NCBI GenBank assembly: GCA_025786725.1
Contig: JAHLTZ010000017.1
Span: 1 to 64,000 of the forward strand
Origin: Syncephalis fuscata S228
Taxonomy: Eukaryota > Fungi > Zoopagomycota
DNA length: 64,000 nt
Reading direction: 5' to 3'
Below, piece by piece: positions 818 to 38,020 of this stretch. Below the pieces are notes generated by a model. It was not told where the DNA came from. It searched no databases and worked only from the letters and a program-made list of their open reading frames with translations. The position numbers were made by a program, and so were the translations under genes. Position 1 is the stretch's first letter. Every line of letters begins with the position of its first letter.

Positions 818-3800
818 TTAAAAAGTATCACCAAAGTGTTCTTTGATGACCTGATTAATAGTTTCTACCCAAAAACGTGCCTGCTTTCCAGTATCTTCAA
901 AATAGTGTGTTTTACTTGGCTATTAAAACGATAAAAGAGTCGTTATATTTACTGATTATTTATAATTACCAAGTACTTACTGTGTGAATAAAAAAGTGTT
1001 TTGGATCCTTAAATTCAGGTAGCATACGAGCTGTAAAGTAAATAGTGCCTTTAACACAACCGCGATGATCATCTGCGTATATTAAACGTGGATGATCGGT
1101 AAGTACTAGTAGACGACGTTTACTAAATAAACCACGTCGTTTATAAACAACCCCAGCATGTAATACTCGTTCGCCCATATTAAGTAAAGGTGGACTATAT
1201 ATATAATGTTAGTACACAGATAATATTACTATTATTGGTATTCTAGCACTTACATTAGTTCACTTTCTGTAATATTAACCGATCGTGTTGTTGATCGTGA
1301 TGATGGTGATTTATCAAGTTTTGTCGATGTAGTCATAATACTATTGTTGTCATTAATTGATGCCATGCTTGTACCACTCGGTTGAAGTGATAAAAGTGAA
1401 GTACTACTACGAGATCCCCATATCTTCTCAGTAATTGACTTTGTCGTAGCAGATGCACTTTTTGCGTGCTGTGACGCTCTTCGTGTAATGGGTGGTGGGC
1501 GGATGGGTATTGGATTCGAAGCAGGAGATGTAGCTCGACTGTGTTGTTGTTGTTGCTGGATAGTATTGTTATTTGAACAATGATGTCCTGTAGCAGCACG
1601 TGAACCGGTCTAGATAGTGGTCTAGATAGTGGTCTAGACAATGGACGGGAAGGTGGACGAGAGGGTGGACGAGAGGGTGGCTGTGATTCTAATAGTGATG
1701 AAATGATGTAGCATGTGATCGTGGTGACCATGGCTCCATTTCAGGCGGTATAAAAGGCGTCATTTCCGATGAAGCTGACATATCAGTAAAATCCATATCT
1801 GAATGAGGTTGATAGGCGTGACGGCATATGGATGCTGAAGCCTTGCCTGCTCATCAATTGCGCTAATAATCGATGAACCCATAGAAGAAGTGGCACTGGC
1901 TAATGTGGCAGCAGATCGAATGCCACCATCATTCATTACACGTAGTCGTGGTGGTGGCATAAGAACTGAACCATCATACTCATCATCACCATCATCATCC
2001 TCATTAGTATTAACATGGCCATTATCGTTATAATTAAGTGAACTGGCGTCCCAAGGGATGCCATCACTTTCATGACTTTCATAAGAAACACGGACATTAT
2101 TATCACTTATTAGTAGATCTGGATCAATTTGTGGTGTTTCTGGACATTGTCTATCCGGTTGGAATAACATGGCCTCACTATTGCTTCTTAGTGGCATTTG
2201 GTTATGGTGATCGACCGGTGGTAAATACGGTAATAGTCGTGGCGGTGTCTGGAGTACCAACTGATCCCAGTCAATAGAGGCAAAGAAGGGATGTGTCTGT
2301 AAAGTATCCATGCCTTGATTGCCGGATCCTAATCGGTGATCTGGATTTAATACCTATATTAATTAAGTGATTAGTATTATTTATTAATAACCATTGGATT
2401 ATTACCAGTAGTTTTTCCACTAAGTCACGGGCCTCAGGAGGAAAGCCTGGTGGAAATTTATATTCCAGTTGAATAATCTTTTGAAAGGTAAGATATTCAT
2501 TGGCTGCCTTGAAAGGTGGTCGACCCGCTAATAATTGGTAGACAATGCAGCCAAATGCCCACCAGTCACAGCTTCTGGTAGCTGATTTATTAGTTAATAA
2601 CTCAGGAGAGACGTACTCGGCCGTGCCAACGAATGAATTGGATCGGTCATTATTGGCATCTTTATCAGCTGGCTCAAACAATTTGGCAGTACCAAAATCG
2701 GTTAATTTAATATGCATTCGTTCATCAAGTAAAATACTATTGGGTGTAAATAATAAATAATACAAATAATACGTATTATTACTTACTTTTCTGGTTTTAA
2801 ATCACTAATATACATTATTGTTATTGTTATCATTATTATTAAATAAACTTGTTTAATATTTATAACCACCTACCGATGTACAACACCTTGTGTGTGTAAA
2901 TAATTTACAGCTTGAGCAATTTCTGCTGCATAGAAACGAGAGCATGCCTCATCAAAACTACCCAACTAATAATATATCTATTAGCTGATAATAACCTATT
3001 ATTATTGTGTATTTACCTTACGCAACCATGTTAGTAATTCACCATTGGGAGCCAATTCTAATGCAAAATCTATTAGTAAAGTTAAGGTAAAATACAGCTA
3101 TCCATTAGTGTTACTAAGAATAAAAAGGATACATAAACTTTGCGCATCTTGAAATGTATAGAACAATTTGATAATCAATGGATGGTGCAACTTATTCAAT
3201 GTTAACTTTTCAATATTAACATATTTCGTTTTCTTTTCTTTAACAATATGGCGTTTATCAAGTACTTTAATGGCGAATTTCTTTTTGGTTAATTTCTCAG
3301 TAGCCAGTATTACCTAATATGTATTTGTAAGTCACCGGCTATTTGTTGACATTAGAGGCAATTCGTACTACTTACCGTAGAATAAGAACCTTCGCCCAAA
3401 TGGCGACCCATAATAAAATCTTCTGCATACCGTTTACGTGCTGGATCCAAGTCGGCCGTTGGTTGTGATGGTGCTGTTGCTGCCGCGGCTGCTTTGGCAA
3501 TTTCCATGAATGGTGGTGGCGTTATTGGTGGCGGGGCACATGGTCGTGGTGGCAGCCGTCGACGTGATTGATGCTCAGTAAACGACTCATCGTTATCGCC
3601 ATCGCCGTTCTGACCTGCCATGCTGCCGTGCTCCATACGCCAACGATCCTCACCGACATCGCGCGCCAGTAAATCAGCCTTTCGATGCGGATCTAATGAC
3701 ATTGATGAATTTGCCGAATGTGTAAATGACGGATAACCAGAGTCTGAGGCCCGAGGTCCTGAATTCACTTTTCGTTCCACGTCTTGCTCAATTGGTTCGG

Positions 3801-36879: not shown

Positions 36880-37092
36880 GTAAGCATATGGATGCATAGA
36901 TCCATCCATCCATCCATCCATCGCTCTATCCATTGAGTCAAATACTGTATATGCCACTCTATCCACTTAATAAAGTTATCGAATGGATGGAAGGATAGAG
37001 GGATGGATGGATGATGGATGGGAACGCATATAAACACCGTGAAACCACAGGGGAACTGACCCGTCTTGTCTTCATCTACTCATCTACTTTAG
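36880..37092 (+). other. Probable 5'UTR intron of eIF1 with a (CCAT)n/(ATGG)n hairpin
   Basis: GTAAGC donor, ACTGAC branch, TTTAG acceptor 36 nt before the ATG. Confidence 0.6.
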
Positions 37093-37128
37093 CATTCCAC
37101 TACTGTATCGTAGTTGTTCAACTTGTTC

Positions 37129-38020
37129 ATGTCCGAAAATACTATTCTCAATCTTGGAGCGCATGGTAAGTCGTGGCCCTGCCTCATCTAGTGGGATTCT
37201 GAACATAGATGACTTATGCATTCTTACTGGTATAGATCCATTCAACGACGACGTTGGTGAAGGTGGTGAATTCGCGCGAAAGATCCGTATCCTTTTCTAG
37301 TCTATGTCATGCGCTATAGATGACTGTATGGCATAATACCGCGTATAGAGACAGAGAGACAGAGAGATAGAGCATATATGCAAGGCATGATGAATCTATT
37401 TATTTTTATTGACTGCGGTCCTTTAGACCATCGTTTTGATCGGTCGTTCCGTGAAGATTTTCTTTTTTGTCATAGTTACACTGACCGTCTTGCTATGCTT
37501 TTTAGTCTCTCTCTCTCTCTTTCTCTATTACTTGCGGGTTATTATTGTCAGCCATTCATCTATATGGCGGATACATTATATACATTATATGTATTTATAT
37601 CTTAACCAATGCAACTGCTGTACTACAGATATTCGAGTAAAACAACGCAATGGCCGCAAGTGTGTGACCAGTATTGAAGGCTTAGAACACGTCATCAAAG
37701 ATGTTATTATTGCGGAAAACCGCCTAAAGAACAAAAGCAAAGAAGCCAAAGAGGCCAAGGAAGGCAAAGAAGCCAAGGAAGGCAAAGAAGATCTCGATGG
37801 CGATGAGCTTTTCGACAGATGGCTTAAGAAGATCAAGAAAGATTTGATGCAAGAACTAAGCGTGGGCGGTGGCAAGGTCAATGCCGATAAGGATGGCGCA
37901 CCTGTCATTCAGTTCCAGGGCAACAAGGCCCGCGAAACTATGGAGTTTTTGACTGGCCTCAAGTTCCGTTATACAAAGGCCAAGATTGACCGAACTCAAA
38001 TTGAAATTCACGACTTTTAA
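37129..38020 (+). CDS. SUI1: Translation initiation factor eIF1/SUI1, divergent, 159 aa (exons 37129-37165, 37236-37286, 37629-38020)
   Basis: MSENTILNLGAH|DPFNDD...KI|HIRVKQRNGRKCVTSIEGL...VIQFQGNKAR...IEIHDF; exon lengths sum to 480 nt. Confidence 0.88.
37287..37628 (+). other. U12-type GT-AG intron in eIF1
   Basis: 5' splice site GTATCCTTTT; branch-like ATCTTAAC at 37599-37606; no polypyrimidine tract; splicing restores the conserved IHIR. Confidence 0.78.
37380..37493 (+). ncRNA. Intronic box C/D snoRNA, snR63/SNORD46-like (LSU helix 69, yeast Am2256)
   Basis: Box C ATGATGA 37387-93, C' GTGAAGA 37451-57, box D CTGA 37481-84, terminal stem GCAAG/CTTGC; guide GTCATAGTTAC complementary to rRNA GUAACUAUGAC; the D+5 rule hits the second A of UAAC. 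Confidence 0.88.

What the first reader, a model, noticed from the sequence alone, without database searches (positions are those of the whole stretch)
37287..37628. A U12-type intron that hosts a helix-69 methylation snoRNA inside eIF1
Seen: the intron starts GTATCCTTTT and has ATCTTAAC ~23 nt before CAG. It contains complete C, C' and D boxes with guide GTCATAGTTAC. The snoRNA sits in the loop of a long flanking stem (tatagatga/tcatctata, GA-repeat/CT-repeat, gcata/tatgc, gcaag/cttgc). Established: the target equals yeast 25S Am2256 (snR63; human SNORD46) in helix 69 at the subunit bridge, and intronic snoRNAs are usually in major introns. Inference: one slow minor-splicing event could co-limit eIF1 mRNA and an rRNA modification near the decoding site, coupling splicing to translational fidelity. 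This is the best candidate for an undescribed system in the window.
Basis: partly seen in the sequence, partly recalled or inferred. Interest (0 to 1): 0.85.

Follow-up and report, generated by a model that had tools for sequence, protein, structure and literature searches.

The report
Minor-type intron carrying a rRNA-methylation guide
The second intron of the translation factor eIF1 gene in this Syncephalis-like fungus has all the sequence marks of the rare minor (U12) intron class. It carries, inside a long RNA stem, the genome's only detectable guide RNA for methylating a key ribosomal RNA loop, a pairing kept across an order of fungi and not found reported elsewhere.

Summary
Window 37287-37628 is a phase-1 intron of a divergent eIF1/SUI1 gene. 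It has a perfect U12-type donor (GTATCCTTT), a TCTTAAC branch site 23 nt before CAG, and a box C/D snoRNA of about 100 nt. The snoRNA's 11-nt guide matches the genome's own LSU rRNA helix 69 and places the methyl group on the equivalent of yeast Am2256 (snR63 / human U46 / Dictyostelium CD4).

The genome encodes U11 and U6atac above Rfam cut-offs. Its U12 candidate is below cut-off but keeps the branch-site-pairing sequence. U4atac was not found.

The same arrangement occurs in four relatives: two Syncephalis species, Thamnocephalis sphaerospora and an uncultured relative. That spans two families of Zoopagales. The flanking arms differ in sequence but pair in every taxon.

About 30 same-guide snoRNA candidates from metagenomes showed no U12 donor. 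The two best matches lie in U2-type introns. A 2014 survey found no annotated ncRNA in human U12 introns.

The long stems fit splicing-independent snoRNP assembly, which weakens it.

No RNA data could be obtained. The scan had already noted U12 introns elsewhere in this genome. Verdict: a real feature and a new variant of known kinds.

The parts
37129..37165 (+). eIF1 exon 1 (M-S-E-N-T-I-L-N-L-G-A-H plus the first base of Asp). The AUG is in poor context, with T at -3.
   Evidence: Read. The N-terminus matches P0001 of S. plumigaleata.
37166..37235 (+). Intron 1, an ordinary U2-type intron (GTAAGT ... CTTAC ... TAG), phase 1
   Evidence: The sea anemone Actinia has an intron at the same position and phase. 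The uncultured relative L015 has lost it.
37236..37286 (+). eIF1 exon 2 (D-P-F-N-D-D-V-G-E-G-G-E-F-A-R-K-I plus the first base of His)
   Evidence: matches P0001.
37287..37628 (+). Intron 2: GT-AG U12-type intron, 342 nt, phase 1, single copy in the genome
   Evidence: The same intron is present in L010, L011, L014 and L015.
37287..37295 (+). U12-type 5' splice site GTATCCTTT
   Evidence: Invariant in five taxa. Complementary to the U11 5' end AAAAAGGG and to the U6atac AAGGAGAGA box of this genome.
37311..37386 (+). 5' arm of the long external stem
   Evidence: Fold, z = -5.1. Equivalent arms of unrelated sequence occur in four relatives.
37382..37489 (+). Box C/D snoRNA (ends approximate). 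C box 37387-37393; internal two-tier hairpin 37414-37453; C' box 37451-37457; guide 37469-37479; D box 37481-37484.
   Evidence: Near-invariant in five taxa. RNAalifold finds 6 pairs with changes on both sides. Weak Rfam hits to DdR4 and SNORD46 on the guide and D box.
37469..37479 (+). Antisense guide, 11 nt, complementary to own LSU rRNA helix 69 (L013:1501-1511). The D+5 rule places the methyl on the second A of GUAAC (L013:1504).
   Evidence: It is the longest complement (11 nt) in the stretch of LSU rRNA searched, and the only one shared by all three Syncephalis sequences tested.
37485..37572 (+). 3' arm of the long external stem
37599..37606 (+). U12-type branch-site motif aTCTTAAC. The predicted branch A is at 37605, 23 nt from the 3' splice site.
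   Evidence: It pairs with GUAAGGA of the U12 candidate.
37626..37628 (+). 3' splice site CAG, with no polypyrimidine tract before it
37629..38020 (+). eIF1 exon 3, including the stop codon. It holds the SUI1 domain with a Lys/Glu-rich insertion.
   Evidence: Pfam SUI1 39.7 bits. 78% identity to the S. plumigaleata protein.

Best explanation
Intron 2 of the single eIF1 gene of this Syncephalis-like fungus is a GT-AG intron of the minor (U12) class.

A cassette lies between its 5' splice site and its branch site. The cassette is a box C/D snoRNA of about 100 nt bracketed by long complementary arms.

The snoRNA is the functional counterpart of yeast snR63, human SNORD46/U46 and Dictyostelium CD4. 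Its 11-nt guide next to box D pairs with the loop of LSU rRNA helix 69 and directs 2'-O-methylation of the adenosine equivalent to yeast A2256.

Inferred mechanism:
1. The arms zip up as the intron is transcribed.
2. This does two things. It juxtaposes boxes C and D, so the snoRNP can assemble although the snoRNA lies 76-153 nt from the branch site instead of the roughly 50 nt preferred for splicing-coupled assembly. It also loops out about 260 nt, so the 5' splice site and branch site end up about 80 nt apart. That is the usual size of this genome's U12 introns, and it suits cooperative recognition by the U11/U12 di-snRNP.
3. After excision and debranching, exonucleases trim the RNA to the snoRNP.

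Shown: the sequence anatomy, conservation, covariation, the rRNA match, and the presence of the snRNAs.
Inferred: use of the minor spliceosome, the RNA processing route, and the methylation itself.
For: U12 class:
- The donor GTATCCTTT is invariant in five taxa while neighbouring intron sequence cannot be aligned.
- The branch motifs are TCTTAAC, CCTTAAC or TTCCTTGAC, 18-30 nt before YAG.
- The intron is phase 1, the phase favoured by minor introns (PMC10639083).
- Positions +5 and +6 are C, C, a poor U1/U6 site. Intron 1 of the same gene is GTAAGT/GTATGT.
- The genome has U11 at 47.5 bits and U6atac at 37.8 bits, both above cut-off. U12 scores 34.6 bits and keeps its 5' end, GUAAGGA and Sm site.
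- In the 100 GTATCCTTT sites sampled, about 16 look like ordinary short U12 introns of 55-131 nt. One is in this window at 3132(-).

snoRNA:
- C and D boxes, and a terminal stem with both-sided changes in 4 of 6 pairs, plus an internal hairpin with 2 more.
- An 11-nt match to the genome's own LSU rRNA H69.
- The target equals Am2256/snR63/U46/CD4 (PMC2794176; PMC8817022).
- It is single copy, and the near-match guide loci lack a C box.

Stems:
- Fold z-scores are -5.1, -4.4, -5.2, -2.65 and -2.8 in five taxa with unrelated arm sequences.
- External stems permit splicing-independent assembly (PMC5519232).
- The di-snRNP needs the 5' splice site and branch site close together (PMC3584512).

Orthology and retention:
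- Gene order SNF2 - eIF1 - SPB4 is shared.
- The uncultured relative lost U2-type intron 1 but kept this intron.
Against: - There is no RNA evidence of any kind.
- U4atac was not found, even at E = 10.
- U12 scores below Rfam's cut-off.
- The branch A lies 18-30 nt from the 3' splice site. That is longer than the 11-13 nt optimum (PMC3584512) and at or beyond the 8-21 nt seen in the short candidate U12 introns sampled from this genome.
- TTAAC would also fit a loose U2 branch consensus.
- Rfam does not place the RNA in SNORD46 (15.6 bits against a cut-off of 40) or DdR4 (21.8 against 70).
Confidence: 0.8

Rival explanations
1. Fidelity circuit. Slow, limiting minor splicing of this one intron is the obligatory route to both eIF1 mRNA and the only H69-Am guide. 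Minor-spliceosome activity would then jointly set start-codon stringency and a decoding-site rRNA modification.
For: - The snoRNA and the intron are single copy.
- The U12 signals are strictly conserved across Zoopagales, while a U2 intron of the same gene was lost in one lineage.
- Both products act in decoding (PMC2794176).
- The long branch-to-acceptor distance (18-30 nt) could make splicing slow (PMC3584512).
Against: - No expression, retention or methylation data.
- Long external stems indicate snoRNP assembly uncoupled from splicing (PMC5519232).
- snoRNAs are stable and usually not limiting (my own knowledge).
- Loss of Am2256 alone has only small effects in yeast (PMC2794176).
- Hosting in translation genes is the norm for intronic snoRNAs (my own knowledge).
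- eIF1 already carries its known autoregulatory poor-context AUG (the autoregulation itself is my own knowledge).
Confidence: 0.1
2. Endonucleolytic release. The near-perfect duplex of 30-80 bp around the snoRNA is cut by an RNase III-type enzyme. The snoRNA would then be made from unspliced pre-mRNA at the cost of that transcript, and snoRNA and eIF1 mRNA would be alternative products rather than co-products.
For: - Very long stems in all five taxa.
- The weak resemblance of the GA/CT stem to plant miRNA precursors in Rfam reflects only its hairpin shape.
- Splicing-independent routes for stem-flanked intronic snoRNAs are known (PMC5519232; Rnt1-dependent release in yeast is my own knowledge).
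Against: - No cleavage data.
- Stem length and sequence vary widely between taxa.
- The stem is equally well explained by folding and by bringing the splice sites together.
- The perfect conservation of the splice signals shows the intron must be spliced for eIF1 to be made.
Confidence: 0.12
3. Major-spliceosome splicing. The intron is removed by the major (U2-type) spliceosome despite its U12-like donor, and the motif match has no functional meaning.
For: - The termini are GT-AG.
- TTAAC fits a loose yUnAy branch consensus.
- The branch motif is farther from the acceptor than in typical U12 introns.
Against: - The nine-base U12 donor is invariant in five taxa, with C at +5 and +6, whereas the U2 intron next door has GTAAGT/GTATGT.
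- The minor snRNAs are present.
- There is no polypyrimidine tract.
Confidence: 0.06

Closest known systems
Yeast snR63 / human SNORD46 (U46) / Dictyostelium CD4 (Rfam DdR4): guides for LSU helix-69 Am (yeast A2256, human A3739)
   Same: It is a box C/D RNA whose D-box guide pairs with GUAACUAUGAC of helix 69 and selects the same adenosine by the D+5 rule.
   Different: - No sequence-family membership beyond the guide (SNORD46 15.6 bits, DdR4 21.8 bits, both far below cut-off).
- From my own knowledge, snR63 is independently transcribed and SNORD46 lies in a U2-type intron of RPS8.
- Here the host is a U12-type intron of eIF1.
Intron-encoded box C/D snoRNAs with long external stems (splicing-independent assembly mode; Hirose, Shu and Steitz 2003, as cited in PMC5519232)
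   Same: The snoRNA lies far from the preferred position of about 50 nt upstream of the branch point, and extended complementary flanks bracket it.
   Different: - The stems here are much longer (tens of base pairs) and zip out most of the intron.
- The host intron is of the minor class, for which no snoRNP-splicing coupling has been described.
U12-type introns of early-diverging fungi (Basidiobolus, Rhizophagus; Larue and Roy 2023, PMC10639083)
   Same: GT-AG subtype, consensus donor and branch site, phase 1, in an old housekeeping gene, in a Zoopagomycota genome with minor snRNAs.
   Different: - That survey never mentions snoRNAs (0 occurrences of the word).
[quoted passage not shown]
- This intron is about 4-6 times longer than its short peers in the same genome.
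Homologous helix-69 guide snoRNAs in unidentified fungus-like metagenome contigs (L073, L069)
   Same: Same guide, similar length, and a similar internal hairpin loop (TCGTTTTGAT in L073). Covariance-model scores are 36.6 and 36.3 bits.
   Different: - Their introns begin with U2-type donors (GTAAGT in L073, GTATGT in L069).
- L073 also shows a TACTAAC branch site and CAG acceptor, a short terminal stem only, and its D box about 40 nt from the branch site.
- L069 is cut off by the end of its contig just after the D box.
- Neither is next to eIF1.

Membership tests
U12-type (minor) spliceosomal intron, GT-AG subtype | 5' splice site consensus GTATCCTT immediately at the exon boundary | tested here: met
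   GTATCCTTT at 37287. It is identical in four relatives.
U12-type (minor) spliceosomal intron, GT-AG subtype | Branch-site consensus TCCTTAAC close to the 3' splice site (optimum 11-13 nt) and no polypyrimidine tract | tested here: inconclusive
   The motif is present in all five taxa (TCTTAAC, CCTTAAC, TTCCTTGAC) and there is no pyrimidine tract. But the branch A is 18-30 nt from the acceptor, longer than the optimum and than the 8-21 nt of the short candidate U12 introns sampled here.
U12-type (minor) spliceosomal intron, GT-AG subtype | Minor-spliceosome snRNAs encoded in the genome | tested here: met
   U11 scores 47.5 bits and U6atac 37.8 bits, both above cut-off, with intact 5'ss-pairing boxes. 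U12 scores 34.6 bits (below the cut-off of 53) but keeps GUAAGGA. U4atac was not found.
U12-type (minor) spliceosomal intron, GT-AG subtype | Excision depends on U11/U12 and U4atac/U6atac | not testable with these tools
Box C/D snoRNA (2'-O-methylation guide) | Box C (RUGAUGA) near the 5' end, box D (CUGA) near the 3' end, and a terminal stem | tested here: met
   ATGATGA at 37387-37393 and CTGA at 37481-37484. The terminal stem has both-sided compensatory changes in 4 of 6 pairs across five taxa.
Box C/D snoRNA (2'-O-methylation guide) | Antisense element of at least 10 nt ending next to box D or D', with a known methylated rRNA nucleotide at D+5 | tested here: met
   An 11-nt perfect match to the genome's own LSU rRNA (L013:1501-1511, inside an RF02543 match of 2629 bits). 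D+5 falls on the second A of GUAAC, which equals yeast Am2256.
Box C/D snoRNA (2'-O-methylation guide) | Accumulates as a stable RNA and the target is methylated | not testable with these tools
   No RNA or RiboMeth data could be reached.
Rfam SNORD46 (RF00218) / DdR4 (RF01572) | Score at or above the family's gathering cut-off | tested here: not met
   SNORD46 scores 15.6 against 40, on the guide and D box only. DdR4 scores 21.8 against 70. It is therefore a functional equivalent, not a demonstrable sequence-family member.
eIF1 / SUI1 (Pfam PF01253) | SUI1 domain above cut-off, and the eIF1-type rather than the DENR or eIF2D type | tested here: met
   39.7 bits against 25.5, in two stretches split by an insertion. 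The PDB profile hits are all eIF1. The other two SUI1 loci in the genome read as DENR-like and eIF2D-like.

The most novel reading that the evidence does not exclude
The minor spliceosome is the obligatory and rate-limiting gate for both eIF1 mRNA and the only helix-69 methylation guide. Hosting the snoRNA has locked this intron in as U12-type throughout Zoopagales. The result would be a fungal circuit tying minor-spliceosome activity to translational fidelity.
Probability: 0.1. Interest if true: 0.8.

Novelty: new variant of a known kind. Interest (0 to 1): 0.55.

Why it matters
Intronic snoRNAs and minor introns are each well known, but I found no report of the two combined in the held paper library. 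The one explicit statement found says that human U12 introns hold no annotated ncRNA genes (PMC4066798).

A case conserved across two fungal families raises three concrete questions:
- Can box C/D snoRNP assembly be coupled to the minor spliceosome, or must it be made independent of it by external stems?
- Does a long stem solve the distance constraint of the U11/U12 di-snRNP when a cassette is inserted?
- Can hosting an essential RNA explain why a particular minor intron persists while neighbouring major introns are lost?

There is also a practical point. The S. pseudoplumigaleata annotation missed this intron and starts the protein inside it.

Tried and rejected
Exons were searched separately by reference.
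- Rfam at gathering threshold: nothing in the window, and nothing in 10 longer candidate U12 loci.
- Second (D') guide: a 9-10 nt complement to LSU rRNA next to box C appears in two species only and in the wrong register for D'. I rejected it as chance.
- An extra rRNA pairing that I recalled from memory for the internal hairpin was not found in the genome's own rRNA.
- U4atac: no match, even at E = 10.
- Second copies of the guide: three one-mismatch loci have no C box.
- Wider relatives: the eIF1 is so divergent that two word-indexed searches and the full HMMER search found only Syncephalis and, through P0004, Thamnocephalis and one metagenome relative. The remaining hits are marine protists. 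The intron therefore could not be examined in Piptocephalis, Kickxellomycotina, Entomophthoromycotina or Mucoromycota.
- Ancient origin: the sea anemone eIF1 shares intron 1 but has no intron at the I|HIR position.
- Other snoRNA-bearing U12 introns: in the 100 of 289 GTATCCTTT sites sampled, only the eIF1 intron holds a C/D pair. H/ACA RNAs were not screened.
- L090, flagged as having a 'U12 donor', proved to have the motif inside an exon. Its snoRNA sits in a GTTAGT intron.

Full report
WHAT IS THERE

The gene on the + strand at 37129-38020 has three exons: 37129-37165, 37236-37286 and 37629-38020. Exon 3 carries a SUI1 domain (Pfam 39.7 bits against a cut-off of 25.5), split by a Lys/Glu-rich insertion. 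A profile of the protein and its relatives hits only eIF1 chains in the PDB. The only other SUI1-domain loci found in the 29.4 Mb genome read as DENR-like and eIF2D-like. This gene is therefore the organism's eIF1, although it is very divergent.

The closest proteins are from Syncephalis plumigaleata (78% identity) and S. pseudoplumigaleata. The window thus comes from a Syncephalis-like member of the Zoopagales.

THE INTRON

Intron 2 (37287-37628, 342 nt) is phase 1. Removing it restores the conserved K-I-H-I-R-V-K-Q-R-N-G-R-K motif.

- It begins GTATCCTTT, the full U12-type donor.
- It has TCTTAAC at 37600-37606, with the branch A 23 nt from the CAG acceptor.
- It lacks a pyrimidine tract.
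- Intron 1 of the same gene (37166-37235) is an ordinary GTAAGT intron.

The genome encodes the minor-spliceosome RNAs as follows.

- U11 scores 47.5 bits and keeps its 5' AAAAAGGG.
- U6atac scores 37.8 bits and keeps its AAGGAGAGA box. Both are above the Rfam cut-offs.
- The U12 candidate scores 34.6 bits, below the cut-off of 53. It retains the conserved 5' end, the branch-site-pairing GUAAGGA and an Sm site.
- U4atac was not detected, even at E = 10.

GTATCCTTT occurs 289 times in the genome, against 203 for the reversed control. I fetched 100 of these sites and scanned them.

- 25 sites have a branch motif and YAG within 800 nt.
- About 16 of them are short (55-131 nt, branch A 8-21 nt from the acceptor, apart from one weak 106-nt site at 34 nt) and look like ordinary minor introns.
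- One of these is in the window itself, in a PDK1-like kinase gene at 3132 on the minus strand.

The eIF1 intron is the long outlier among the plausible candidates, and the only sampled site with a C/D box pair.

THE snoRNA

Between the donor and the branch site lies a box C/D RNA.

- C box ATGATGA at 37387-37393.
- D box CTGA at 37481-37484.
- A degenerate C' box, GTGAAGA, at 37451-37457.
- A two-tier internal hairpin at 37414-37453.
- The guide GTCATAGTTAC at 37469-37479.

The genome's own LSU rRNA (L013; RF02543, 2629 bits) contains GTAACTATGAC. That is the longest complement (11 nt) in the stretch of LSU rRNA searched, and the only one shared by all three Syncephalis sequences tested. By the D+5 rule the methylated residue is the second A of GUAAC.

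In yeast the helix-69 loop carries Am2256, Psi2258 and Psi2260 (PMC2794176). This numbering fits only if A2256 is that second A. The same site is guided by snR63 in yeast, U46 in human and CD4 in Dictyostelium (PMC8817022).

Rfam gives only weak, sub-threshold hits, and precisely to DdR4 (21.8 bits) and SNORD46 (15.6 bits, guide and D box only). The RNA is therefore a functional equivalent, not a demonstrable sequence-family member. The D' guide is not conserved. The snoRNA and the intron are single copy, and three near-match guide loci lack a C box.

COMPARATIVE EVIDENCE

The orthologous loci were recovered for four relatives.

- S. plumigaleata (L010, intron 3176-3550).
- S. pseudoplumigaleata (L011, intron 942-1362).
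- Thamnocephalis sphaerospora (L014, intron 2670-2998), from a different family of Zoopagales.
- An uncultured relative from JGI metagenomes (L015, intron 2030-2288).

The gene order SNF2 helicase - eIF1 - SPB4 helicase is shared.

All five taxa have the following in common.

- An intron at the same codon and phase.
- The invariant GTATCCTTT donor.
- A U12-type branch motif 18-30 nt before YAG.
- A nearly invariant snoRNA with the identical guide.

The rest of the intron cannot be aligned. Even so, every version folds into a long stem that encloses the snoRNA, with z = -5.1, -4.4, -5.2, -2.65 and -2.8.

RNAalifold on the five snoRNAs with short flanks finds both-sided compensatory changes in 4 of the 6 terminal-stem pairs and in 2 pairs of the internal hairpin.

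The uncultured relative has lost U2-type intron 1, whose position is old because a sea anemone shares it. It has kept the U12/snoRNA intron. The sea anemone has no intron at the I|HIR position, so I have no evidence that this intron predates fungi.

HOW UNUSUAL IS IT?

A scan of metagenome contigs for the guide plus D box returned 80 loci. About 30 of them have a C box at snoRNA distance.

- None has a U12 donor upstream that holds up on inspection.
- None lies next to eIF1.

I built a covariance model from the five Zoopagales sequences and scored these loci. The best outside matches are L073 and L069, at 36-37 bits.

- Both lie in introns that begin with U2-type donors: GTAAGT in L073 and GTATGT in L069.
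- L073 also shows a TACTAAC branch site and CAG acceptor, its D box about 40 nt before the branch site, and only a short terminal stem.
- L069 is cut off by the end of its contig just after the D box.

[quoted passage not shown] The pan-eukaryotic minor-intron survey records minor introns in Zoopagomycota but does not mention snoRNAs at all (PMC10639083). Three further searches found no report of a snoRNA in a U12-type intron.

MECHANISM

These steps are inferred, not shown.

Human box C/D snoRNAs prefer a position about 50 nt upstream of the branch point. Long external stems make assembly independent of splicing (PMC5519232). Here the D box lies 76-153 nt from the branch A, so the stems are the expected compensation.

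The U11/U12 di-snRNP recognises the donor and branch site cooperatively and needs them close together (PMC3584512). In the predicted fold of the window's intron, the stem leaves about 24 nt on the 5' side and 56 nt on the 3' side unpaired. That total of about 80 nt matches the usual size of this genome's minor introns.

I therefore read the cassette as a snoRNA in a stem. It folds itself for snoRNP assembly and at the same time keeps a long intron short for the minor spliceosome. The mature RNA would then be released by debranching and exonucleolytic trimming.

Cleavage of the duplex by an RNase III-type enzyme is a rival route that I cannot exclude.

The idea is that slow minor splicing co-limits eIF1 and H69 methylation. 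It remains possible, because the guide is single copy and the branch-to-acceptor distance is suboptimal. Nothing here tests it, and four points argue against it.

- The stems point to assembly uncoupled from splicing.
- Loss of Am2256 alone has small effects in yeast.
- Hosting of snoRNAs in translation genes is commonplace (my own knowledge).
- eIF1 here keeps its poor-context AUG (T at -3). From my own knowledge, that is the known autoregulatory device of this gene.

LIMITS

The spliceosome class, the stable RNA and the methylation are all inferred from sequence. U4atac is missing from my searches. Taxon sampling stops at Zoopagales.

Earlier notes of this scan list many other U12-type introns in this genome, and one case with RNA support. 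I did not check them and do not count them as evidence.

Noticed in passing
window 3061-3132 (-): A second, textbook U12-type GT-AG intron of about 63 nt in a PDK1-like protein kinase gene (exons read ...FQDAQSLY | FALELAPNGELL...). The donor is GTATCCTTTTT and the branch motif is ACCTTAAC, 12 nt before TAG.
   Followed up: partly
window 36880-37050 (+): Just upstream of the eIF1 start codon, inside what looks like a 5'UTR intron (gtaagc ... cacag), complementary CCAT and GGAT microsatellites form a long hairpin (fold z = -6.0). No C/D boxes were seen in its loop.
   Followed up: partly
window 37629-38020 (+): The eIF1 is highly divergent. It has a Lys/Glu-rich insertion of about 45 residues after the first strand-turn of the SUI1 domain, and LSVGGG in place of the usual FACNG. 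A full HMMER search of 1.8 billion representatives found only 8 proteins at E <= 0.001.
   Followed up: partly
window 37121-37135 (+): The eIF1 AUG is in poor context (T at -3, T at +4). The same holds in all four relatives. About 25 nt of 5'UTR before it is conserved among the three Syncephalis sequences.
   Followed up: no
L011:1278-1718: The public S. pseudoplumigaleata gene model (P0002) misses the U12 intron. It starts at an ATG inside the intron and so gives a false N-terminus.
   Followed up: yes
L015:1947-2029: An uncultured Thamnocephalis-like relative from JGI metagenomes has lost U2-type intron 1 of eIF1 but kept the U12/snoRNA intron.
   Followed up: yes
L073:7616-7754 and L069:4753-4879: Probable homologues of the same helix-69 guide snoRNA in unidentified fungus-like metagenome contigs. 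Both sit in introns with U2-type donors (GTAAGT, GTATGT). L073 has only a short terminal stem. L069 is cut off by the contig end just after its D box.
   Followed up: partly
window 51166 (+): ATATCCTTTG with a weak branch-like motif (TTCTTGAT) 284 nt downstream. It could be an AT-AC minor intron or chance.
   Followed up: no
G000:C2:219910 and G000:C2:239066 (L150, L151): Two candidate U12 introns of identical length (66 nt) and branch motif, 19 kb apart on one contig. They may belong to paralogous genes.
   Followed up: no
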